Assembly (NCBI GenBank): GCA_963924565.1
Contig: OZ004612.1
Coordinates: 29,078,001 to 29,142,000, forward strand
DNA: 64,000 nucleotides
Reading direction: 5' to 3'
From: Ascidiella aspersa
Taxonomy: Eukaryota
Shown: positions 32,590 to 47,175 of the stretch, in pieces
Layout of the letters: the number at the start of each line of letters is the position of its first letter
Position numbering within the stretch: the stretch's first letter is position 1
Notes under the pieces: model-generated
What the model was told of the DNA's origin: nothing
Seen by the model: the letters and a program-made list of their open reading frames with translations, nothing else
The model's database searches: none
Made by a program: the position numbers and the translations under genes

Positions 32590-35500
32590 TTAATTAACAG
32601 ATACGCAGTAAGCGTTCTCCTCGTTTGTAATCGCGATCGGAACACTCGTCACTTCCGGTTCCGCTTCCGGTTCTACTTCCGGTTCCGGTTCGTCTTCCTG
32701 AAAGTTTTGATTGACATATTGGTGGAGTAGAACGGGCGGATCCATAGCTGCCACGTAGCATTCGATGTAGCGTTCCTGAAAAGGTAAGCATTTTTTCTTG
32801 TGATATCTTTAAAATGAAGTCCGAATACTTTGACTACGAAAAAAAATCCAACAAATAAATTTTTCTTTTGATAACAGAAATAAATATTACTATATGAACT
32901 GTTGCTACCAGGCATAATATTAATCATAAATAGCTCTTTAACTTTTATATCTGATAGATTTTAGCTGTGAGTAATGAAATTCGTTATACGAAAACCATCG
33001 AATTTGCTTTTTTCAAACAAATTCTACAATCACCCAAAACGCATAAAGGTGTCATCTCTTTAGTATATTTTTTACCGGAGAGTCCACCATGTTTGGTCTC
33101 ATATCTCGTAGATCTTTAACAATGCGGAAAACGTCCACCGTGTCATTGGACTTTAAACATTCCAGAATGTTCACCAGGGCAATGAAAGTTCCAGTTTTTC
33201 CACAGCCGTTCCTGAATACAGCAAAGTGTAGTGTTTTTTTAAATCATGGCATTAATTATTGATTTGATATAGCTAACAAACTATAAGATAGGCGTAGTAG
33301 GGAATATTAAAGCCCGTAAACAAGTAGGTAGCATTTTAAACGTTTCGAATAACTCTTTAATTTTTTTCAACATAGTGAGAAGCCACTGATTCTAAGTATA
33401 TATATACTGCCGAGGCAAAATATCATATAATATGATGTGTGTAAGTTAATTTGTCTACAATTAAAAGCATAGACGCCCAGTTTTCATAGTGGGCTTTTTA
33501 GCCTGAAAGCGAGTCTTTTTAACATTAAATAGAAACACGATGTTTACATAAACCAGCAGTTTAAAGATTTTGTTTTCTGAAGCATACTCACTTGCAGCAA
33601 ACTACAACGTATTTTCCACCATTGCGTGCGTTGATTTCCTGCATTTGTGCGATCAGTTTAATGAAATCGTAAGCCATGGGAGGTTTGTCTTTCCAATCGT
33701 TTGCTTGAATAACGCAAACATCACAAGATTCCTAATCAAGTAAGATTTTAACATACTTTTAACATGTTATTTGTATTAAAAGGATGCAGCAGGCAACCGT
33801 GCTATAGTTGTTTGTCGACTTGCTTTCCTCGGAGCCTGTGTAGCTCAGTTGGTAGAGCAACGGTCCCGGTATGATCGAGGTCGAGAGTTCGAACCTCACC
33901 ACAGGCAAGTTTTACGAACAAGATGCAGCAGGCAAAGGAGCTATGGTTGTTCTCGAATTCGCCCCCCCCCCCCCCCCTCTGAGCCTGTGTAGCTCGATCT
34001 TCGCGGTAGAGCGATGGTCCCAGTATGGCCGATCGTGAGTTTCAAAGTTCTCCACAGGCGAGTTGTTTTTCTAGCTTACCTTGCTTTCGACTGTTTTGGT
34101 AAATTTGTCGAAGGCTTTCGTTGTAGAAGTACATTGAACATTTATACATGCAAACTGTACAGAATGCGTAATCTTATCATTCAGGAGTCGCCCGTTTGAT
34201 TAACGATAATGTTGTACCAATATGTCTATGATTGTTTTAGTGACTTGATAGGGTACAATAAAACCCATTCAATCTGAAGTGGTTTGTACAAATAGGTGTT
34301 ACAGTTGGCTTTTGATGAGTGATTCACCTTTAAACTGGTTACCTCAGTCCGGCGATCGATGTTCATTATATGACTAAGGTAGTGCGTTCGAACCTCGCCA
34401 CAGGCTAACTTCGATTGCACGCAATCACTTATGACATAGCACATATTAAGAGTATATTACCTGGTTAGTTGTAGAGATAGAAACGTCGTGGATTCTGGCA
34501 AATGGAAGTTTCGCTGTGTTGGCTACTGCTAAACTTATGCCGCCGTACTGTTTCATTTTTGCCTTGAATAGCTTCTTCTGTAAATTAAAGAGCTGTCTTC
34601 GAGATTTGGTAAAGTTGTCTGCTTGATATTACCAGTGATTTTTAATTGTTAAACTGGAAGGCGATTCAAATTTGCAAACAAAAAAAACGTACAATAAGTA
34701 AAATTCACATTTTAAAGACAGTAACGAGACACATATACTGTATGGAATATGTCAATTGATTTACCGTAGTAAATAAATAAGAATGATAGCATTATTTTTC
34801 ATCAAAAATTCGACTCAAAACTTTGCGGTCACTGCACTCCAGTTTGACAAACACTGATATAGACACACTAACTTACGGTTTCATCAAGACACACAAGAAC
34901 GCTGACGTTTTTGGCCAGTAACATTTTCCAAAATTCTTCCTCTTTTCCCGCTACTGGACACTGGGTGGCGATAAAGTGTCCGCCAAACCGGTTCTGTAAA
35001 GCATACGGCTTTAAATTTACCAAAATGCAAACTTAATACAATAGGTAACCTTTTTTATATGGCTGACCCCTTTTGCTTTTTAACATGATAGCGTGTCCCA
35101 TTCCTTTTAAACCAAATAATTCTTTTATCTAACCCTACAATAATTAATTACTCTCCGAATACTACTCCAGCAAGCTAAACTTTGTGAACACAAGCTGAGA
35201 TGCTTTATTATCATTAACATTTAAGTAATATGTAATGACAATAATGCCCTTTAGCTAATATAATGTAAATCAAATCACTTAAAAGATGTTACGTGGGCCC
35301 TTAAAACTTCTAAATAAAATCCAGGTTGAGGAACATTACTTTAGAGAAACCTGTCCCTTAAATAATTACCTCAATGTATGAAGCATTCGTTTTTATCTCC
35401 ATTTGTTCTGTTTCAGACCATATCTTGACTGCGTTGCTGTTATCTATATATTGAAGTATTTATTGTTTATAATTTAACTGAAACATCAAGTAAATAGCCA

Positions 35501-38500
35501 GCAAAACCTACAGCAAGTTAGAGACGAATTCCCAGGCACCCATTCCGCTCCATAATTCCATTCGTCCAAAATTTTGAATTCTTCTTTCGCGATATGGACT
35601 CTATATAAAATGATTCTCACGTAATAATGTATGGCAAAAAGGGGTGCCTTTTCAAAGGCCTACAGCAACTAGTTATAAGTGCAAGGTTTGAACTAGTCTT
35701 TGGCGAGGTTCGAACTCACGACCACAGCATAACATTTTTTTATTGTATTATTATTATTATTGCTAGTCAGGATATGTTTAAGGTTTTATATCACAGATGT
35801 ATACAAGAACATTACGATTTGTAAGGTAACTAGTTTAGTTCAACACTTAACTGCCGTACATTTGTTCTCTCGTCATTTGCTGCAACTTGTCGGCGTTGTA
35901 ATCTGTGTCGGGTAGGGACAGGTGTTCCAACAGCAATCTTCGAATAAATGAATATTGCTCCTGAAAGAAAACAACATTATACAGCATGACTAAAGTAGTT
36001 TATTAAAGTCGTTGTTATTTTTCTTAAAGCAGGATGTGGTATGATACACAGATTTTCGTAGAAATTTCTATAAAAACTATAAAATCTAACATAGGGATGT
36101 CCCCAACTTTACATTATATATACTAATACATTTAAAAAACAAAAAAAATTGCTTTAGAATAAGAACTTTACATCAGTTGTTACGTGCTTTGATAAATTTA
36201 CTTTTAAAGGTTGCGATGCACCGGTATATTTTTCTTTGCGAACGTTTCGTCAATAATTCTTGCCATCGCAGTGTGAAATAATTTAAAATGAAAACGCAAT
36301 AATCGACAAAACACACGGTAATCGGCAGAGTAAGCTCATTTTACACACCGACGATGACATGAGATGTTGCCGATACGTTTGTAAACACAAATATATGTCG
36401 ATTTTATCGAAACGTCTTGTATTTCATAGATGTTATAGTTTTTATAAACACTGTGTGTATCTTACCCAGTCTTGGACCAACTGAGATTTATGTTGTTTCA
36501 ACTTTACAACCGTATTATTTAAATCCACATTTCCTTTGGTATCTGCCTCATCGAAAGCAGTGTCCATTGCAATGTAAACACCAGTCAGTTCTTTAGAGGC
36601 ACTGAAATTATAAAATAAATTATTTTTGCACGCTAAGAAATTTTATTTTCTGTTGGGGATCCAACTTGAAAAACATTATTTCAAATTTCTAACTTTAAAA
36701 TTGCTTAGCGTTTTCTTTTAGCCTACTTGTCAGACAAACTTTCCTTTAGATTAGAAAGCCGGTAGTATTTTTTCAGAAAAGAGCACTTTCATTAAGATAA
36801 ACGAATATTGATGCTTTGTATGGTAAATATTGTACCTTCGCACCTTTGAAACGGCTCACATTTGTTCATTTCACTCTAATAAGTCACAGTTACCTGCAAT
36901 GAACGGTAATTGGATTCCTTCTGTCGTGACTTTCTTCGACCATTTTTCGCAAGTGAATCAAGCTAGTTGTAGTAACAGGTGTTCCGTGGTCAGGCCAGCC
37001 AATGAAGTGGAACTGAGTGACAGGGCGTTGTTCCTGGTACTAAATATACACACACAAAAAAAGCTTGTCATTTCCCTAACACTGCTTCGTGTCCCAGTGG
37101 CCGAAGGCTTAGTTTAAGAACTCTCTTCTGGTGTAAACGAACTTATAAAGCGACGTTTTGGCAGCAGACACTAGCTAACCACAGGTATATAACTTCGTTT
37201 ACACCAGAAGAGCGATTTCTATCTATTGATACTTTATTCAGGTTTAAGTTTTAATTTTACACAAATTTGAATAACAAGTAATTACTTCGATTGTCCCAAG
37301 TTCAAGCTTCCTTTGGATTATGTTTCCAAACCGCTTTTCCTCTAATGAATTTATCCTGAACCTTCCGTGTGTTGAAGTTGACAATAATTGCGGCCAATAT
37401 CGTACTGGTTTGGTCTGATATAAGATTCAGATTTAAACGTGAATGGCAAATTAAAACGGTTTATTTCAAGGACGGTTACCTTGGCTTGTTTTTCGCTTAT
37501 CATCACAATGGTTGAGCAGTTCTGTTGCCAAATCAATTTCCAGAATTCGTGAATCGTTGTCGATTTGGGATCCCGCGTGGATATGAATTTAGACTCGTTG
37601 TTGTAACCCTATTTTCAATTTAGTATGAATTTAAGCAAACGTTGTTTGTGCAATAAAAAAGAAAGAAAGATTAGAATACTTTGTGTAAAATAACACAAAG
37701 ATTTTGTTAACCTAGCTTACCGGTATGTAAGGAACGTTGTAGTAGTCCCTTCCCGCTCTTGTTCTTGCTTTAAAATTTTTACAAAATTTAATTGACGCTA
37801 CATCATTCATTTTCCAATAGTGTTATTGGTAGTCATTTGTACTTACTTGAATATAAGTTTTTCGATTTGTACCTCGAAGCATTGCGTTTGTTCAACGTTG
37901 CAGTCAGAATGCTATTAATTCCTAGACTTGAACGCAACCCCTATAAAAATGTATTTTACTTAGGAAAAACAAAACAAGAGTCTTGATAATTTACCACTCA
38001 GTGGCGCACAGTCAATGTAGTGCACAAAAAATATAATGTATTTCTCTGATGTTTTGGTTTGGCCGATCGGTAAAACACACTACTCTATTTTTAAAAGCGT
38101 GGCAGTGTTTTCAAAGAGTAATTTAAACCTTGCAATTGGATATTGACTTCCATATTCTAGTTCGATCCTCGTAATTGTTCTTAAACGGAAAAAAGGGACT
38201 TTTTAATATTCTACATAGCCACCGCCGGAAACCAACTTACATTGAACTGGTCTTGGCAGTCTTTAAAGTTGTTTTGTGAGCTCAGCAGATAGTTGTTGTA
38301 TAAGTCAGATTTTAATCTGAGTCTTTTAGCCTTGGGATCATTTTCGTCGAAACTAGTATCTGTAACATCAACTAAAAGAATTGTTAAATAAAAAGTCGCA
38401 TTATAGTTGGTAACTCTTTGCAAACACTTTCTTACCATCTGGAAAGCTCCACTTGCGCTCGGAGTCCACCTCTCCACCTCTGTACGTTTAAAATGAAAAA

Positions 38501-41500
38501 AGGTTATAAAAAAGCTACATAGCTTAGTCAGTTTATGGTTAATGTAGCTCGAAATTACTGAATAAGGTTGTTTTATAACGTTGGAACATAATTGACCTTA
38601 GCGAACATGCTGTTTGGGATAAAAATTGGCGCTATGGCAGTATAAATGAATTTTACGAAATCGGAATTAATCCTGCACGATTTTGAAAGTGCTCAATCAG
38701 CACTCGTGTCTAATATTATTATCTATGGTTCAGTCACAATACCTTACCTTTTACAATAGCAGCAGCAAGCAACGCACAAAGCAATAATAAGCAAGATCGT
38801 TATGATGAGCAGAATTAGTGTGATACTGGCCATTCCTAAATAGAAGAAAAGTTTGATATATTTGCTATGGTTTATTTTAGCTGCACACGAAAAGTTACTT
38901 TTTGCTGATTTGCAAAATCCATCCACTGCCACCCATTCATTTGGACCTTCGCATGTTGTAGCTCTAATCTGTGTTAAAATTATTATGTGTTGTGTTTTTG
39001 TAAACGTGTTACAATTATAGCAAGTTTACCTGCGCAGTTATGCGAGTTTTATTTCCGTGTCCTTGAAGAGAAATGTTCATTCGATGTTCCGCGTTAGGTT
39101 CTGTTCTTGTCAAATCGTATTCTTGGAACGTTGTGTTTGATGAACTGATGACTTTAACCTGAAATGTCATCCCTGTTGTTGAGATTTTCGTTGGTTTAAC
39201 TTTTAACGGTTTTCTAAAGACCGGGAAAATTATTTTTACGAGAAATTGATATCGATTTAAAAAACAATGTTTAATCCTTTTTGTTTATTTTGCAATGTGC
39301 TCGTATCTATTGGTTCCTAAAGCATTTACATTTTAGTGACTTGTCGCTTAAATCATAGGCGTAGCCAAGGGGGGCTGAGGGGCCATGGCCCCCCCAAAAT
39401 TTATAAATATTTTACTCTTAATAATTTGTTTTTTTAGCATTTTTGAGCAGTACCACAACATTTGATCACAGGCATGCCACACTTTCAATTCTCATGTACT
39501 GTTACGTCACAAACGATGTAGTTAATATAACATTTACTATACATTAATGTAGTTTTACTACTTTCAGACAGTTTTTGCTCTTGGACTATTTTTTTAGTAT
39601 TGCGTTAACACTAATTCAGTTGCTGCTCGAAACGGTTTGCTAGCATTGTGATGTGTGTTCGTTGCGGCAGTTAATACAATGGTAAAAGCTAAACGAAAAA
39701 TTCCAACTTTTTGGCCCCCCAAAATTTTCGGCTGGCTACGCCACTGGCTTAAATGCACCCTACGTTGAAACAAAGTGTGCCTGAAAGTACAGAAAGGTTT
39801 GAGGAATACAAATAAAAGTTGATTTGTTTAAATAACGTTGTTTGACCCTGGCATTGTTTCATGTTTTAACTTTTTTTAATAATTACCTCTGCCACATTTT
39901 AAAGCTTAACAATGCACAATTGTTGCAATTAATTTCCCAAAAAACACACAAAATTTCTCCGTTGTCGGTATCACCAAGAAAAAGTACTTTCATTTAACTT
40001 ACTGTGTAGCTGAGAATATTTCCGCTCTCATCTGACGGCATAACGACTGTGCAAACCTTTACGGTTGATTCTATCCTGGCTTTTGTAACGGGTTCGGCCA
40101 AACCGTAGCTTGTGTTAGCTGATAAGGTTGAATGCACAGACCCGCTGAAGCAACGACCAAATAATGCAGCCACCTTTAAACAATACACACTGTAAACACG
40201 AGTTTATTTGATATGGAATTTGCTACTTTAGATTAGGTTTGCAACCGTAATATCCTTGCATCAATATAGTGCTGTATATCCTCGAAAAAACGTTTATCGG
40301 GTGGGCAATAAAGAATTAATCTGCCTTGTATTTCGAGGCTACCATTTTCAAATGGTTACACTTTTGTTGGTAATTGGCTTGATAGATAGCATTAGTAAAT
40401 AAATCTTGTGGACTCTATAGATAAATGGGGCCTAATTGTTGCATGGTTTGCTATTTATTAACTCGCAATTGTTATGTATGGAATTACTTCTGCTTGGCAT
40501 TATATATTATTAGAAAACGTGCTTTAATTCGCAGTAGATAGAAACATGGAGATTAAGAGTCTTACCTTAAAGGTGTATTTTGTACGTTTTGTTAGATTCC
40601 CAATGGTCGTAGTGAGATCTTTATAGTCAACACGTTTGTCGGTGATGTTTTTACCGCTTATTACCACCTGCTTAATACATTGCGTTGATAATATAAAATG
40701 ATAATTCATGCTCAGCTAAAACATCGCGAAAAATCAAAACAAATTATATGTTAAACACAATATCCAGTACCTCTTAACTAGGCCGCAGCGAATTTTAAAA
40801 TATAGAAATTTTCGGTGAATTACCGTGATATTTACCGCATTTTAAAAACATTCGTTGATGTAGTAAGAATATCAAAAATAAAGCAGAAGAAAGAAGCATT
40901 TTGAAATTTTTCAATATTTCTTTATTCATTTCAAAAAAATAATATTTAAAACGTTCACAAAATGCTACCTACTTCTGTATGGGCTTTGATATTCATTCCA
41001 CGTTTAACTACAACCTCCAGCCATTATCCTTTAAAAACATGCTGATGTTATTAAAATAATAAGTATAAAAGTGGACGTTACCGTTATATTCGAGCAGTTA
41101 TATTTGTCTTGTAACTTCAGCAAGTTGTCTTTCCAACTGACTTTAAGTTGTGTGGAATTGCAAGTAACCGGCTCCAATTTTGGTTCAACTGCATATCAGA
41201 TGAAACATTAACGTGCAATAGTTCGTTGTAAAAGCTTTGTTTTAATTCATTGACAACGAAACGCCTTCATGCTCCTTACGTATTGCCTTGAATTGTATTA
41301 AAAACGATTGAAAAGTTATGAATATATTGTTTTGTAAAAAGTGTGCGACTAGTTTTTAAGTTTATTAGAGTGTGAGAAGCAAAAAAAGAAGTTTTAGATC
41401 ACTGCCCTATATTCTAATTAAGCTGACCTTTACAGGCAATTGAATATTTCTTTAATTTAAAGATGTTCATAAAACCGTGAGTAAAAATGTAGTAATTTGG

Positions 41501-44500
41501 AACATTTCTTTAAATTTTTCGTCATTACTAATGTTTGAATACTATTGCCAATGTTTGTTAAATTGATCAGAAATTTGTATCATTGTCATACTTACACTTT
41601 ACTAGGCAAGAGTAGTAAGTGTCACTATCTTTACAAGCCTTGTTAAGAATTTGATTACTATCAAAGTCCCAAACTTTCTGCTGGCAAGTTGTGTGACCAA
41701 CATCTGTGAACTCTGTAGCATTTTCACCATCGCTCCATTTCCATTGTTGGTTTGACTCATTGAATCGAGCCCCGATGAAAACTTTAGAGTGTAAATCTAC
41801 ATAATAATGAAGTCTATCAAAAACGTGAGGCTAAGGTCAGTTTCATGACACACATGGAGCACATGGCCATAAAGTCCCCAAAATATTTTTTGCTTGTTTT
41901 AACTACAAAAATTAGAAAATTTAACTCTGCGCAGGATCTGATTTATCTTTCTAGCATGTTTTTATTATACCACTTTAATACAATCGTTTTAGCTCAAAGG
42001 CATCTTACGTCGTTTTACACGCCCCCAAAGAAAAGTGTGATAACTTAAAATGCATAAAGCGCGAATCGAAAACATCTTCTCATAAAGCTGTTGAATTAAA
42101 AGCAACACCTCTCCAACCTAAAACTTTAACGATATAAACCAGCTGTGTAGGGATCTTATGGTTATTTCTTTATGTTGTCACGTTTCGATAAAACTTTATG
42201 ACATCATATTTGTATGTAACTTTATGACATCATATTTGTATGTAACTTTATGACATCATATTTGTATGTAACTTTATGACGCGTCGTTGTTGTGACTTTG
42301 TAATGTCCAGGTGTGAAGTACCTTTATGACCTTATCCCTGAAAAAAAATTACTGCCAAACAACAAATTCTAAATGCGCTCCTAGAATTTGGCTATGAGAT
42401 GTTAAAGTAATATGCTAATGATTTGTTTGGTATTTTTAACTTTTTTATATTGTATATATTGCACCAGATATGTTGCTATCGCACAAAGCGTAGAATCTCC
42501 CCTTTTCGTTCATGAAGTCTAGATAGCTGTCGTCTTTTACATCTGTAAGTCTCATTGACCATGGCTCCCCAGAATTGTCGTATGAGTAGATCTCCTTGGA
42601 ACCCGGCTCATGCGTACTTTGCCCGTATAAAAGGAACATTTCATTCCAATCTTAAAGCGAATAAAGAATATTTTTTAAGCGAAGGGTAAAATTTCTTGCT
42701 GTATCGATTGTTTGGAGTTTTTAGAAGCTGGTGATGTTTTATAGTAGTGAAATACATCTGATCAAGTTGACTATACGGGCGTTAATGTTTCAAAATTGGT
42801 CAGATCCTTATAGTATTCAATTAAACAAAAAGTTGCAACTAAAAATAAGAGTTAAATGTTTCTCTAACTTACAGTCTCATTATAACAAAGCCTTATAAAA
42901 CGATATTATTGTGTTGTGTAGAGTAACTTAGCTTCAATATGTTCATCATGGGTATATTCAATTTTGGTCAATATACCCTCAAGGGTTCAGACTTAGCTCT
43001 AAGAAGTCAGAACAATTCTTTAATTTGTATATACTCGGGTTTAGCCTTATCTGATTGGGCATAGCAATTTTCTTTATAGTGATTTGTTTACCTCGATGGC
43101 AGGTTCTATCCACCGAAACCAACCACTTTTCCACTTCGCTTTTTGACTCACAAAACCGTATGGGGATTGTTGACGGCGAATTGTCGCTTCTGTGACGAAA
43201 CAGTAACAGTCATTTAAATTCCCCCGTATATGATAAGGTCAACGCGGAGAGGTTTTCAAAATGTGCTTCGCGACGCCATTGTGCGTCGTTTCAATTTTCA
43301 AGTGCCACACACATTAATTATAATGTATCGTATCTTAACTCCATTGTGGTAACAAAATGTTCACAGAATTTATTACCTACTGACGTGAACAATATTGGTA
43401 CTCTAGATCCCCTTTAATATAAAGTTGCTTGTACTAGCATAATGTAACAAGCACTTACATATAGTTGTTTCTCGACTTGTTCCTGTCTGAGCCTGCATAG
43501 CTCAGTCGGTAGAGCGACGGTTCCGGTTAGGCCGGAGGTCGTGAGTTCAAACCCCATCCTAGCCTATATTTAATTTTCTAGCCTGCATTATTAAACGATA
43601 TATTTGGTAAGCCTGTGATAGCTTTCTGTGTACTACTAACATATGCATACGAGTTTATTGTTACTATAAATACTACAGTCCAACTTGCTGTAATTACTAG
43701 AGTTCAACAAAATTTAAAGGGAAGTAGGTTAATACAAAGTACTCACGAGTTGTAAAGATCAATGTACCACAAATGTCCGAGATGTTGGGGACTAACCCAA
43801 GGTGAAGACTCGTTTGAAAATAACGAATATTTGTAAATACTCGTTTTGCTCTTGTTGTAATAGATCCAAACTCGTGTAATATCTTAAGTGACAAAAGGTA
43901 TTTATGAGTTCTAAGCAACAATATATCTTAGCATCTTCTGATCGGCGTTAACGTTATTGGACTTTGACATATTGTTAAATCTTAAATAAGTTTTTTCAAT
44001 TTATATCGTTAAAATATAGCAGAAACCCTAACCAAACGTTACATTATTTAGGGTACGAAACGTCAGTACATGTAAAAGGTAAAAGTGCGTAAGAATGCTG
44101 CCTTTTATTCAGTATATTCATCATACAGTGTTTCAAGCGTTGCTACCTGGTACGTAGAAGGTTTCCCGCAGTTCGACGAAACCTTGGTAAAAATCGTCTT
44201 TCACATTGGTGAGTCTCATCAAAGTTGAATTATCTTCGTGACTGTAGGAGTAGATTGCTTGGTAGCCCGGCAACTGTTTGCTGCTTCCGTATAACTTAAA
44301 TTCTTCCGTCCAATCTACGATAAAAAGCCACACAATTTTGAATAACTGGCTGTATTATTGTTATTACCGTAGCTCGATCGATAGAGCGACGGTTGCGGTA
44401 TGCCCCGAGGTCTAGAGAAGTGGTTCTCAACCGCGGCTCCGAGAGTATTTTAGCGGCTCCCATTAGGGTGAAAGCAATAAAATGAGGTTAAAAAAATAAA

Positions 44501-47175
44501 TATAGGGTTCAAAAAATTATCAGAAGCATATTTGCACACGAGTTTGCTCGACAACAGCAGGTATTTTTAGATTAATTGTCTGATTTCGTAAATTTATGAC
44601 GTCATACCTGAAAATTGTTATGCCCCCTAAACAAAAACACTGGATCCACCCCTGCGCATAACATACCGCGATGCAAAAGCAACTTTCTAAGGAATCTTTT
44701 TTTTTAGAAAGAAAATAGGACGTTTCAGAGTAAATTGAAAGAGAAACATTTGCCGTTTCTTCGATGTCTTTTGTTGTTATTATTTTTAATAAAATGCTTA
44801 AAGTTTTGGCGGCTCTGTTTTAAAATCGAGTATTCAAATTTGGCTCCGATGCTGACAAAGGTTGAGAATCACTGGTCTAGAATGTGAAGTCTGAATCGAG
44901 CCAAAAAAGTGAACTCGAGTCTGAGTCAAATAAAAAAATTAACCCGATTTTATCTCTGACCAAGTTCGCCTATTACGTCGAGTCCGACTCCGACTCAAAA
45001 CTATAAAAGGTTAATGTCCACCAATCCACTCATAGGAGTGTCATATAATTCAGTTCTTCGCAATAAGTGGTTGGCAATTATTTTGCAATATGCTATTCAA
45101 TTCCTGCAATTTACTTTTTTCTGCCTTCGCAATTTGCTACTGCGCAGGCGCACGTCTGACTCGGGACTCCGATAGTCTTACGGAGTCTCACTCGACTCCA
45201 AAATCCAACTGCGCAGTCTTGGTCCCAACTGCTTCTTATTAACTGGACAAATATATATATATATATTTCCAACATCTTTCACTGGTCTACTTACGGGATT
45301 GACAGGGTTCGGTAATCACCACCCAACTTCTTGTAGTTTTGTCGGAGCAGAAATACAATGATATTGGCGAGTCTGGTACCAACGAACTGCACACAAAAAT
45401 ATAGCTGTTTTAGGGCCTGCTACATCCAAAATGTTTTGTTGCACCGGTGCAGGGGTCCCTGAACTACGGCCTTACGGTTAAATTTTTCGGGCCCGCGACA
45501 TATTTTCCTAATGGTTCTGAAATACAGGCATCAAAACTTTGTTAGTCAAACAGTTTGTCGGATGTCCAACTACTAGGCTAAGTGTTGACGAAATTCAAAG
45601 CTAAGCAAAGCTTCCAAAACCTTTGTAAAAAATAAATATTGTTCAATAGTGAAAGCGGTAGGAGTTGCTTTATCTTTGAACGCTCAATTACGATAAATAG
45701 TAATAGCCTTTTCTTTATTAATAACGTTTTAACGTTCATTCAAAGCAATAATATTAACTACTAGGCTAAATGTTGACGAAATTTAATGCTAAGCAAAGCT
45801 TCCCAAACCTTTGTGAAAAATAAATATTGTTCTATTATGTTTTTAATTTTGGTTATCCGGACCTTTATGACCGTTGTGCAATCGAATTTTACACTCTTAT
45901 TTGTGAGTTAGGCTTATTTATTGGGTTGTAGTTGATTCACACTTAAACTTGCATAATTATTCTAACCCACGCTCCCTATTCAGTCACGTAGGTTTTTTTG
46001 AAGCAAATCAGTAATAAATATTTTGCCGCCCTTTGTTTTATTTTTTTAGTATATGCCGCAAGCTGAAAAATGCACTGGACGCCCATTATAAACATTAATT
46101 GTTATATTGCAATTTAAAAGTTATACAGAAGTTTCTTTAAATATTTTCATCAGCGTAACCTCTTTAGTCATATGTGTTATATTCATTATAACTTACGTGT
46201 CATTATACAGATTAAAGTACCACATATCACCGAGATCTTCGACACTTTTCCATGTCTTACTATCAGTGGTTGGATGTAGAGAATACTTGTAGATCTTCGT
46301 TGTTTGGTTTTCGTAGAATATCCAAATACGAACCGTTCCTAGAACAGGTTCAAAGATTGCTGGTTAAGCCAATTTATTGTTTACAAGGTGTTTTTTTCTC
46401 GCAAGTTATGTTAAAATATTGATTTAGTTCCTAATCGTCGGGTAATGAAACTCCAATAGGGTATTATGACAACTTGGAAGGAGTAATAGTGAAAGCGGTA
46501 GGAGTTGCTTTATCTTTGAACGCTCAATATCGATAAGTAGTAATAGCCTTTCCGTTATTAATAACGTTTTAACGTTCATTCAAAGCAATATTAGGTTTTT
46601 ATTAAGTTGTTTTTGTAGTTTGTTTTTTCTTATGTAGTATGTTCTTTTCTATGATCACAGGTCACTGTTTTATTGTTTTTTAAAAAGTTGTAGCATTCTT
46701 TTAAAAGAGGTAAAAGAAATAGTTTAGGAATACGGAATATTCAAATGACTCTCTTCAGTCTTTTTAAATTAGAATTTTAGAAAAATTTTAATTTCTTAAA
46801 GTAAATTTGTTTTGCATTTTTTCAACCAAATATTTTAATTTTGAAAACAAACTTGACCTGGTGCATATTTTAGGCTTGCTGCTTTCGTAAAATTTTGATT
46901 GACATCTGCTTCTCTGGTGACAACCAAATATCCACCTAGCTCTTCGCATCTTTTCTCTGCCGTATACGCATCGCTCAACTCATCCGATAAAGTGATCACG
47001 CTGTCGCCAACCGACGATAGATCAGGTGCGCAAACTACTAAAAACATTTTGTAAAACCTGGTCGACAGGAATTCGACAAGTGTAATTGTTTAAACGCATT
47101 TGCATACTTACCCACCCCGGAAGTCAGGTAACATCTACTTATCAGCAAAATACTTGTTAGAAATATCTCATTCAT
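32590..47175 (-). CDS. Receptor 1: receptor-type protein tyrosine phosphatase-like protein (split CTLD + 2 ABC inserts + 2 FN3-like + TM + tandem PTP D1/D2, both catalytically degenerate; ~1248 aa)
   Basis: 31 phase-consistent exons: 47112-47175, 46858-47034, 46197-46338, 45295-45386, 44147-44314, 43747-43882, 43092-43189, 42465-42650, 41596-41796, 41082-41188, 40566-40667, 40003-40173, 39030-39158, 38899-38968, 38748-38835 (TM), 38436-38479, 38241-38371, 37847-37940, 37721-37767, 37480-37608, 37286-37414, 36894-37039, 36466-36601, 35860-35960, 35512-35600, 35370-35443, 34877-34993, 34461-34577, 33592-33731, 33076-33211, 32590-32775 (TAA). PTP motifs: DYYNVPYI, EFWKLIWQQNCSTIVM, RYWP, QFHFIGWPDHGTP, PITVHCS, LVQDWEQYSF; D2 NASYI, FIATQCP, EFWKM, VDVFRIVKDLRDMRPNMV. 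Confidence 0.9.
32700..35600 (-). other. PTP domain D2 region of receptor 1 (P-loop VCCKNGCGKTG, no WPD)
   Basis: EEFKIL, NASYIE, HFIATQCP, EEFWKM, GKTGTFIAL, VDVFRIVKDLRDMRPNMVDSPERYIECY. Confidence 0.85.
33783..34075 (+). mobile_element. Two tandem copies of the tRNA-like repeat (best cloverleaf 33834-33907)
   Basis: GCCTGTG...CACAGGC acceptor stem, tagctcagttggtagagc, cggtc-ccggtat-gatcg arm (GGT in loop), gttcgaacc; second copy ~33982-34060. Confidence 0.8.
35860..38371 (-). other. PTP domain D1 region of receptor 1 (WPD loop intact, P-loop HCSASKELTG)
   Basis: Exons 17-24 translate to the recognisable PTP motif series; a phase-2 intron falls inside HCS|A, the position typical of classical PTP genes. 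Confidence 0.85.
39354..39746. mobile_element. Non-autonomous hAT element (MITE)
   Basis: Ends cataggcgtagcc / ggctacgccactg; perfect 8-bp TSD gcttaaat (39346-39353, 39747-39754); ggccccc-caaaat subterminal motifs. Confidence 0.85.
42192..42280. repeat. 26-bp minisatellite (aactttatgacatcatatttgtatgt, ~3.4 copies)
   Basis: Three exact units plus a partial unit. Confidence 0.9.
43460..43640 (+). mobile_element. tRNA-like repeat copy
   Basis: gagcctgcatagctcagtcggtagagcgacggttccggttaggccggaggtcgtgagttcaaacc with leader and body. Confidence 0.75.
44418..44874. mobile_element. hAT MITE inserted into a tRNA-like repeat copy
   Basis: TIR aagtggttctcaacc / ggttgagaatcactg; TSD gtctagag / gtctagaa; gcggctc subterminal repeats; left flank 44369-44417 is the 5' part of the tRNA-like repeat. 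Confidence 0.8.
44890..45215 (-). repeat. Interspersed repeat, inverted counterpart of ~1695-2080
   Basis: actgcgcaggcgcacgtctgactcgggactc (45139-45169) closely matches the reverse complement of gagtcccgagtccgacgtgtgcatgcgcagt (1769-1799); gagtc-rich ends. Confidence 0.6.

What the first reader, a model, noticed from the sequence alone, without database searches (positions are those of the whole stretch)
41596..47034. C-type lectin domain split in two by an inserted ~130-aa domain
Seen: the CTLD N-half exon (A...C...GG.L..TRE, helices 1-2) is separated from the C-half exon (VFIGARF, WKWSDG, C..C..YYSC) by three A/B/C exons, or six in receptor 1. This holds in all four complete modules (8410-4173, 29520-24967, 20039-16972, 47034-41596). 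Known: the alpha1 Cys pairs with the final Cys of a CTLD, so the fold must close around the insert. No EPN/QPD or WND motif is present, so Ca2+-dependent sugar binding is unlikely. Inference: the CTLD serves as a scaffold presenting the insert as the ligand-binding head. Such a split domain could be missed by standard domain scans.
Basis: partly seen in the sequence, partly recalled or inferred. Interest (0 to 1): 0.85.

Follow-up and report, generated by a model that had tools for sequence, protein, structure and literature searches.

The report
Lectin fold split by nested domain
A sea-squirt membrane-receptor gene encodes a C-type-lectin-like domain cut in two by one to three copies of an unclassified ~135-residue beta-rich module. 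The two lectin halves are still predicted to close into one normal fold, and the build recurs in well over 100 gene modules, but it has not been seen in a transcript from end to end.

Summary
On the minus strand, 47034-41596 carries eight AG/GT-bounded exons that join into 399 codons without a stop. They are a lectin N-half, two three-exon cassettes (134 and 140 codons) and a lectin C-half.

[quoted passage not shown] Profiles of each half hit almost only CTLD chains in the PDB, and the two halves map to complementary parts of those chains.
- **The halves close on each other.** Folded as two chains they score ipSAE 0.87 (best control 0.02). The tightest contact is the alpha1 Cys against the last Cys, the canonical CTLD disulfide.
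- **No sugar-site motifs.** EPN/QPD and the beta4 WND are absent.
- **The build is conserved.** Splice sites and phases match in every copy examined. 23 of 24 sampled modules are split, and a different organism (metagenome contigs) has the same order. One unsplit copy has a phase-1 intron at exactly the insertion site.
- **The insert is unclassified.** It has no Pfam or PDB sequence match.

The scan found this build before on other DNA of this genome (s1-790818). Verdict: a real new variant of a known fold, function unknown.

The parts
46858..47034 (-). CTLD N-half exon (beta1, alpha1 with the C1 cysteine, GG.L strand, alpha2); 177 nt, intron phase 1 on both sides
   Evidence: AG/GT sites. The acceptor at 47034 coincides with an RNA-read loose end at 47033, from paralogue reads. 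The family profile hits the N-terminal halves of CTLD chains in the PDB.
46197..46338 (-). Insert cassette 1, exon A (phase 1 to 2)
   Evidence: HMM E 1e-27; AG/GT; acceptor and donor position conserved in 17 paralogue exons.
45295..45386 (-). Insert cassette 1, middle exon with two cysteines (phase 2 to 1)
   Evidence: Weak HMM hit (E 0.8-2.5), but AG/GT sites in the required phases and the family pattern ..FC....W.V....C.
44147..44314 (-). Insert cassette 1, exon B (phase 1 to 1)
   Evidence: HMM E 1e-28; conserved AG|..TGG acceptor and CCAG|GT donor.
43747..43882 (-). Insert cassette 2, exon A (phase 1 to 2)
   Evidence: HMM E 4e-26. An RNA loose end lies exactly at 43747 and continues into a middle-exon-like sequence in a paralogue transcript.
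43092..43189 (-). Insert cassette 2, middle exon with two cysteines (phase 2 to 1)
   Evidence: HMM E 2e-19; AG/GT.
42465..42650 (-). Insert cassette 2, exon B (phase 1 to 1)
   Evidence: HMM E 3e-29; AG/GT.
41596..41796 (-). CTLD C-half exon (VFIGARF = beta2 'WIGL' strand, WKWSDG, C2, C3, YYSC = beta5 with C4); phase 1 on both sides
   Evidence: HMM E 2e-35. The family profile hits the C-terminal halves of CTLD chains. It co-folds with the N-half at ipSAE 0.87 against 0.02 for the best control.
33055..39025 (-). Downstream context on the same strand: a transmembrane-like stretch (about 38800) and exons of two tyrosine-phosphatase domains. Probably the same receptor gene, but the link was not tested.
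   Evidence: Hydrophobic segment in the open frame 39025-38747. Pfam Y_phosphatase hits on five exon frames, E 2e-11 to 2e-4.

Best explanation
The exons at 47034-41596 encode the membrane-distal part of a type I receptor in a sea squirt. Its phosphatase domains lie downstream on the same strand. A compact C-type-lectin-like domain without a Ca2+ site is interrupted in the loop between helix alpha2 and strand beta2 (just before the 'WIGL'-type strand VFIGARF). The interruption is two tandem copies of an unclassified, beta-rich module of about 135 residues with an internal cysteine pair.

Each module is a three-exon cassette with phase-1 introns on both sides. It sits in what is a plain phase-1 intron in the one unsplit family member. 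The cassette can therefore be duplicated or lost without breaking the frame, and one to three copies are seen.

After translation the two lectin halves pack into one normal CTLD. Beta1 pairs with beta5, and the alpha1 Cys lies beside the last Cys. The module or modules then protrude from that loop.

Shown here: the exon structure, its conservation, the CTLD identity of the halves, and their predicted mutual fit. Inferred: that all eight exons are joined in one mRNA, that the modules fold on their own with their ends close together, and (weakest, about 1 in 3) that the modules rather than the lectin surface contact the ligand.
For: - Eight AG/GT exons join into 399 codons with no stop.
- Acceptor and donor positions and phases are the same in 15-17 paralogue exons of each type and in another organism's contig.
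- Nonsynonymous divergence is below synonymous in all twelve exon pairs; dN/dS, computable for seven, is 0.13-0.52.
- The N-half profile hits only CTLD chains, in their N-terminal parts (22 of 22). 11 of 14 C-half hits are CTLD chains, most aligned over their C-terminal parts.
- The co-fold of the two halves scores ipSAE 0.87, best of three controls 0.02. That mark was reached by 51 of 78 solved complexes and 2 of 108 mismatched pairs. The runs agree in at least 99% of contacts, and partner pLDDT is 92. The best contact is Cys29 of the N-half with Cys69 of the C-half, and beta1 residues 13-16 touch residues 66-69. With an unrelated partner each half drops to pLDDT 37-58.
- Cys spacing C3-C4 is 8-9 residues, as in canonical CTLDs.
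- 23 of 24 sampled modules, from every cluster sampled on contig C6, are split.
- The unsplit copy L008 has a 228-nt phase-1 intron at the same site. It nests among split copies in the N+C tree with support 93/88.
- Metagenome contigs L015/L016 from another organism carry N-A-B-C.
- RNA reads of paralogues end at the predicted N acceptor. At the A2 donor they continue into a middle-exon-like sequence.
Against: - No read or transcript shows the N-to-A or B-to-C joints. The one RNA run laid gave 35 reads, all from paralogues.
- The symmetric phase means a transcript that skips the cassettes would also be in frame.
- No full-length fold was made, so the position and independence of the modules are unverified.
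- Pfam does not recognise either half, and the PDB E-values are individually marginal (5e-4 to 0.03).
- The co-fold test is calibrated for separate proteins. A pass may simply reflect memory of the CTLD fold: it shows likeness, not folding in the cell.
- No protein containing the module was found in 1.8 billion representative proteins, apart from exon-sized ORFs.
Confidence: 0.78

Rival explanations
1. The three-exon cassettes are alternative (cassette) exons. The main product is an ordinary unsplit CTLD made by N-to-C splicing, and the split form is a minor or regulated isoform.
For: All introns flanking the cassettes are phase 1, so N+C, or N+one cassette+C, stays in frame. An unsplit family member exists and keeps the intron. 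No RNA joint N-to-A or B-to-C was seen.
Against: Cassette exons are under purifying selection and keep their splice sites in all copies examined and in a second organism, so they are translated. A paralogue transcript shows A joined to a middle exon. This rival does not exclude the main reading; it concerns proportions.
Confidence: 0.12
2. The halves close in trans. The N-half of one chain pairs with the C-half of another chain (a domain-swapped dimer), with the insert acting as a long hinge.
For: The co-fold shows only that an N-half and a C-half fit, not that they come from one chain. Many CTLD receptors act as dimers (general knowledge).
Against: There is no evidence for it. The unsplit copy joins the two halves through a short loop, which shows that closure within one chain is the native geometry of the family.
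Confidence: 0.06
3. The A/mid/B exons are not part of the receptor: a nested gene, or transposon-derived pseudo-exons inside a CTLD intron.
For: They lie in long introns that also hold repeated elements. Neither Pfam nor PDB sequence search names them.
Against: They are on the same strand and have no start codon or stop of their own. Their phases fit the flanking halves exactly. Order and sites are conserved across copies about 35% identical and across organisms, with pN below pS.
Confidence: 0.03
4. The two 'halves' are unrelated short domains that only resemble CTLD motifs by chance.
For: No Pfam hit on either half; marginal single E-values.
Against: Nearly all PDB hits are CTLDs, with the halves mapping to complementary regions. 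The co-fold scores 0.87 against 0.02 with canonical Cys and strand pairings, and each half is poorly folded without the other.
Confidence: 0.02

Closest known systems
C-type lectin-like domains without a Ca2+ site, as in NK-cell and myeloid receptors (CD94, KLRG1, KLRB1, CLEC9A, CLEC6A; Pfam PF00059 superfamily)
   Same: The best PDB profile hits are these proteins. Shared features are the alpha1 Cys to last Cys pairing, the C2-C3 pair, a WIGL-type strand, a WxWxDG motif, a short long-loop region, and no EPN/QPD/WND. Both are membrane receptors with tyrosine-based signalling tails (context: and earlier notes).
   Different: The domain is interrupted between alpha2 and beta2 by one to three whole modules of about 135 residues. 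It is a type I receptor, with the tail downstream of the lectin domain, and here carries phosphatase domains. Pfam does not detect it.
Sea-squirt intelectin with a nested 238-residue domain
   Same: A lectin fold in the same genome is interrupted by a whole extra domain carried on exons flanked by phase-1 introns.
   Different: The host fold (fibrinogen-like intelectin) and the insert are different, it is a single gene rather than a family of over 100 modules, and that insert has bacterial relatives. I did not re-test that note.
C-type-lectin-fold variable proteins of diversity-generating retroelements (Mtd, TvpA) and formylglycine-generating-enzyme-type CLec folds (from my own knowledge)
   Same: They show that the CTLD fold tolerates sizeable insertions while keeping its core.
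   Different: Those inserts are extra segments of the same domain in phage and bacterial proteins, not an autonomous, duplicable exon cassette. There is no sequence relation (the weak Mtd rows are noise level).
Receptor-type protein tyrosine phosphatases with a non-Ig N-terminal recognition domain (for example PTPRZ/PTPRG with a carbonic-anhydrase-like domain, PTPRM/K with MAM; from my own knowledge)
   Same: A membrane-distal recognition domain lies upstream of a transmembrane segment and two phosphatase domains.
   Different: No known vertebrate receptor phosphatase has a CTLD head, split or not. Whether the M4 exons and the phosphatase exons share one transcript was not tested.

Membership tests
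[quoted passage not shown] | Significant match to the curated family model (Pfam Lectin_C) | tested here: not met
   Each half scanned alone gives no Lectin_C hit even at E 10. That is expected for half-domains. The joined N+C sequence could not be submitted, so the proper test is still open.
[quoted passage not shown] | Sequence relation to solved CTLDs, covering the whole domain | tested here: met
   The N-half profile gives 22 of 22 hits to CTLD proteins, in their N-terminal parts (for example CLEC6A residues 17-69 of 147). The C-half profile gives 11 of 14 hits to CTLDs, most in their C-terminal parts (for example agglucetin 78-125 of 126, KLRG1 62-110 of 112). E-values are 5e-4 to 0.2. 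The halves abut, with nothing missing.
[quoted passage not shown] | Canonical cysteines: alpha1 Cys paired with the beta5 Cys (C1-C4), plus the C2-C3 pair | tested here: met
   Cys29 (N-half) and Cys69 (C-half) form the closest predicted contact, with 0.3 A expected error. C2-C3 spacing is 17-19 and C3-C4 is 8-9 residues in the family. This is a prediction, not chemistry.
[quoted passage not shown] | Fold closure by pairing of the first and last strands, with the WIGL strand in the core | tested here: met
   N-half residues 13-16 touch C-half residues 66-69, and C-half residues 12-14 (F-I-G) touch N-half residues 22, 25 and 36-37. ipSAE is 0.87 against 0.02 for the best control. This comes from a two-chain model only.
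Ca2+-dependent carbohydrate-binding C-type lectins (sensu stricto) | EPN or QPD motif in the long loop and WND in beta4 | tested here: not met
   None is present in nine family C-halves. The stretch from WxWxDG to C2 is only 12-14 residues. So this is CTLD-like, not a classical sugar-binding C-type lectin.
Beta-propeller repeats (PD40 / LDL-receptor class B) as the identity of the insert | Significant match of the insert exons to the repeat models, and repeat units related to one another | tested here: not met
   No Pfam hit for any A or B exon. The B profile reaches PD40 proteins only by adding up 3-7 partial matches (E 3e-5 to 4e-4). The A exon has language-model likeness 0.90-0.91 to Ldl_recept_b clusters, a level that 4-10% of shuffled sequences reach. 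A against B by hhalign gives probability 1%. Lead only.
Receptor-type protein tyrosine phosphatase | Tyrosine-phosphatase catalytic domains downstream of a transmembrane segment in the same gene | tested here: inconclusive
   Y_phosphatase hits on five same-strand exon frames at 37608-33055 and a hydrophobic stretch near 38800. Continuity with the lectin exons in one mRNA is not shown.

The most novel reading that the evidence does not exclude
The nested ~135-residue module is a domain family of its own, with no Pfam or PDB sequence relative. It serves as the variable, copy-number-adjustable ligand-contacting part of a very large sea-squirt receptor family (over 130 modules), carried on a sugar-blind CTLD scaffold. 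The receptors are wired to either phosphatase or tyrosine-motif tails, making this a lineage-specific self/non-self or microbe recognition system built in a way not described for any lectin receptor.
Probability: 0.3. Interest if true: 0.8.

Novelty: new variant of a known kind. Interest (0 to 1): 0.62.

Why it matters
The CTLD is one of the most studied recognition folds in animals, and I found no report of a whole autonomous domain nested inside it. Four full-text searches found none, which is limited evidence.

Here the nested build is the rule in a family of well over 100 modules, and it is shared with at least one other organism. It shows three things. The alpha2-beta2 loop is a permissive site. 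A phase-1 intron inside a domain can serve as a docking site for a symmetric exon cassette whose copy number then changes freely. And domain scanners miss such genes entirely, so lectin-receptor repertoires of tunicates are probably under-counted.

If the module is the ligand-binding part, this is a new kind of invertebrate-chordate recognition receptor.

Tried and rejected

- Pfam Lectin_C on the joined N+C.

**Searches that gave nothing useful**
- Pfam on the six exon frames, and on 6 A and 13 B exons: nothing.
- PDB sequence profiles of A and B exons: nothing below E 0.8.
- Representative-protein search with the B profile: ten hits. Four are exon-sized ORFs from metagenomes, five are PD40 propeller proteins and one is a bacterial Ig-like/ankyrin protein; these six larger hits match only by summed partial repeats. 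No full-length or transcript-derived protein appeared.
- ESM Atlas: B exon no usable hit; A exon weak Ldl_recept_b likeness.

**Ideas set aside**
- The insert as a half-propeller. Most modules have one cassette, whose ends must meet within one CTLD loop, and no repeat relation between A and B was found.

**Exon-only folds**
- AlphaFold2 on exon A alone (pLDDT 94; four short strands and a helical turn) and on exon B alone (pLDDT 78; three strands). These show only that the insert is beta-rich.

This gene was not seen expressed in the 6% of the run that was read.
Full report
**Setting.** The window is AT-rich eukaryotic DNA (GC about 0.35). It is G000:C6:29078001-29142000 of a 308-Mb assembly. 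Earlier notes of this scan call the organism a sea squirt, and I took that from them. All features below are on the minus strand.

**The observation**
- Stop-free frames and self-comparison gave the exon candidates. Reading the DNA at each border fixed them:
  - N-half 47034-46858
  - A1 46338-46197
  - mid1 45386-45295
  - B1 44314-44147
  - A2 43882-43747
  - mid2 43189-43092
  - B2 42650-42465
  - C-half 41796-41596
- Every exon has AG before it and GT after it.
- Intron phases are 1 after N, then 2 and 1 inside each cassette, and 1 after each B and after C.
- The two cassettes are 402 and 420 nt. The joined frame is 399 codons with no stop.
- The other modules in the window have the same order: N 29518, A 28846, mid 27825, B 26507, C 25174; N 20037, A 19094, mid 18259, B 17856, C 17116; N 8408, A 7535, mid about 6340, B 5142, C 4386. 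A fifth module starts at 1188 and runs off the window.
- The C-half of the 20039-16972 module is divergent.

**Are the two halves one CTLD?**
- Pfam finds nothing on either half.
- Profiles built from 10 N-halves and 9 C-halves were searched against all PDB sequences.
  - The N-half profile hit only CTLD proteins, in their N-terminal parts: PLA2 receptor, DEC-205, CLEC6A 17-69 of 147, surfactant protein A 30-80 of 148.
  - The C-half profile hit CTLDs in 11 of 14 rows, most of them in their C-terminal parts: agglucetin 78-125 of 126, KLRG1 62-110 of 112, CD94 57-117 of 121, CLEC9A 71-124 of 132.
  - Single E-values are marginal (5e-4 to 0.2). The pattern is not: the halves abut and nothing of the fold is missing.
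- I could not submit the joined sequence, so I gave the two exon products as two chains to the complex predictor.
  - The score was 0.87, against 0.02 for the best of three controls. That mark was reached by 51 of 78 solved complexes and 2 of 108 mismatched pairs.
  - The runs agree in at least 99% of contacts, and partner pLDDT is 92.
- The closest contact is Cys29 of the N-half with Cys69 of the C-half.
  - N-half residues 13-16 touch C-half residues 66-69 (first and last strands). The F-I-G of VFIGARF sits against the GG.L strand and helix 1.
  - With an unrelated partner each half falls to pLDDT 37-58, so neither half is predicted to fold alone.
  - A pass here may reflect the model's memory of the CTLD fold. 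Likeness to that fold is the point at issue, but it is not proof of folding in the cell.
- Cysteine spacing fits canonical CTLDs: C2-C3 is 17-19 and C3-C4 is 8-9 residues. EPN, QPD and the beta4 WND are absent, and the long-loop region is short.
- The host is therefore a compact, sugar-blind CTLD of the NK-receptor type.

**Is the insert really part of the protein?**
- *Splice sites.* In 15-17 paralogue exons of each type, the acceptor and donor fall at the same aligned residue and in the same phase. The set covers 35-80% identity and includes a contig from another organism.
  - AG + 2 nt + TGC at the start of N.
  - G|GT after N.
  - AG|AT or AG|AC before the D.QRVW of A.
  - ..|GTAAGT after DLYN.
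  - AG|..TGG before B.
  - CCAG|GT after B.
  - .|GTAAG after C.
- *Selection.* Nonsynonymous divergence is below synonymous in all twelve exon pairs. dN/dS could be computed for seven pairs: N 0.37-0.52, A 0.21-0.39, C 0.13-0.14. The mid exon, the B exons and one C pair are saturated at synonymous sites.
- *Spread.* The genome has at least 150 N, 139 A, 48 B (single-sequence query) and 130 C exon matches. Nearly all are on contig C6, in clusters from 5 to 32.6 Mb.
  - I fetched 20 further stretches of the genome from those clusters and scanned them with the exon HMMs. Together with the window, 23 of 24 modules carry A/mid/B between N and C.
  - L007 has three cassettes in front of its C-half.
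- *The exception.* L008 (C7:31034429-31035028) has N and C separated by a 228-nt intron. Its donor and acceptor are phase 1 at the very position where the cassettes sit elsewhere, and it is in frame.
  - In a tree of N+C (19 modules, midpoint root) L008 nests inside a clade of split copies, with support 93/88 and 85/80, on a long branch.
  - It is therefore more likely a copy that lost its cassette than a relic of the ancestral state. The root is not secured.
- *Another organism.* An exon-sized ORF found with the B profile (P0002) lies on four metagenome contigs of 41% GC. These carry N, A, B and C in the same order over 6.5 kb.
- *RNA.* The only RNA run offered gave 35 reads at 95-99% identity, with fixed differences, so they come from paralogues.
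  - They stop at 47033, the predicted N acceptor.
  - Three reads pass the A2 donor at 43747 into a sequence that reads, in phase 2, like a middle exon (..S-I-P-I-W..).
  - That shows family members are expressed and that A is spliced to a middle exon.
  - The N-to-A and B-to-C joints were not seen, and this gene itself was not detected in the 6% of the run that was read.

**What is the insert?**
- About 135 residues: exon A 45-56, middle exon about 30 with two conserved cysteines (..FC....W.V....C), exon B 55-62.
- It has no Pfam family and no PDB sequence relative.
- Among 1.8 billion representative proteins, only exon-sized ORFs contain it.
- AlphaFold2 on exon A alone is confident (pLDDT 94, mostly strands). 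On exon B alone it is fair (pLDDT 78, three strands). So the insert is beta-rich, but fragment searches find no fold.
- Two weak leads point to propeller-blade-like hairpins. The B profile reaches PD40 repeat proteins by summed partial matches. The A exon resembles LDL-receptor class B clusters at 0.90-0.91.
  - I do not accept these leads. The levels are near noise, A and B are not related to each other, and a single cassette must bring its two ends together within one CTLD loop, which an open three-blade arc would not do.
- The fold remains unknown, and three-fold symmetry is not supported by sequence.

**Context**
- Downstream on the same strand lie a hydrophobic transmembrane-like stretch and exons of two tyrosine-phosphatase domains.
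- Upstream (58.2-49.7 kb) is a sodium:neurotransmitter symporter gene.
- The receptor therefore probably starts between 49.7 and 47.1 kb. I did not find its signal-peptide exon.

**Mechanism and rivals**
- The best reading is a nested-domain receptor head. The CTLD closes around a phase-1 intron site into which a symmetric cassette was placed, and that cassette has since been duplicated (1-3 copies) and, once, lost.
- The functional claim that the insert is the ligand-binding head is untested. Exon B is slightly less conserved than the C-half (0.35 against 0.42 mean identity), but the N-half is just as variable.
- The main rival, not exclusive, is that the cassettes are skipped in some or most transcripts.
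- Domain-swapped closure, a nested foreign gene, and chance likeness are unlikely for the reasons given under the rival explanations.

**Known or new?**
- Domain insertion as such is common: 20% of multidomain proteins according to the abstract of PMC13114784, a paper that does not mention lectins.
- Four full-text searches found no description of a CTLD interrupted by a whole domain, or of a tunicate CTLD receptor phosphatase family.
- The scan itself has met the same build before, at about 5.1 Mb of this contig. Note s1-790818 reports at least 150 copies, with no transcript or fold checked.
- I rate it a new variant of a known kind, of solid but not extreme interest, until the insert's fold and role are known.

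Noticed in passing
G000:C7:31034429-31035028 (locus L008:3429-4031, + strand): The only unsplit family member found. N-half and C-half are separated by a 228-nt phase-1 intron at the exact insertion site. It has a long branch and nests among split copies in the tree.
   Followed up: partly
window 43370-43566 (also a similar translation at 34041-33805): An intronic element with about 58,000-fold word depth in both DNA-like runs. Its frame reads ..GTVALPTEL.RLR.., which looks like a very high-copy SINE or tRNA-derived repeat.
   Followed up: no
window 46579-46427 and 45739-45581, minus strand: Two copies of a short repeated element (frames starting MNVKTLLI..RLLL..IERSKIKQLLPLSLL) inside the intron between exon A1 and the first middle exon. 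Probably a MITE-like repeat.
   Followed up: no
window 17116-16973, minus strand: The C-half of the second-position module (20039-16972) is shortened and lacks the WIGL-type strand motif and WxWSDG. The module starting at 1188 and the one at L007:8177 have N and A exons of the same subtype, and each follows another module on the same strand. This suggests two-module receptors with a degenerate second CTLD.
   Followed up: partly
window 58190-49703, minus strand: Exons of a sodium:neurotransmitter symporter (SLC6/SNF) gene lie directly upstream of the receptor (Pfam SNF, E 2e-17 on the first exon frame).
   Followed up: partly
window 37608-33055, minus strand: Exons of two tyrosine-phosphatase domains downstream of a transmembrane-like stretch near 38800. 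The frame at 36642-36445 reads ..SASKELTG.. where the catalytic loop continues, as another first-reader note says (pseudophosphatase idea, not examined here).
   Followed up: partly
locus L006:4801-5122 (G000:C7:5908301-5908622): An isolated middle exon and a B exon only 60 nt apart, the B exon broken by a frameshift, on another contig. Probably a decayed fragment of the family.
   Followed up: no
window 42465-42650 (exon B2): Exon B2 carries an extra cysteine (..ALCDS..) that other B exons lack. With the first Cys of the N-half, that leaves two cysteines in the 399-residue model without an obvious partner.
   Followed up: no
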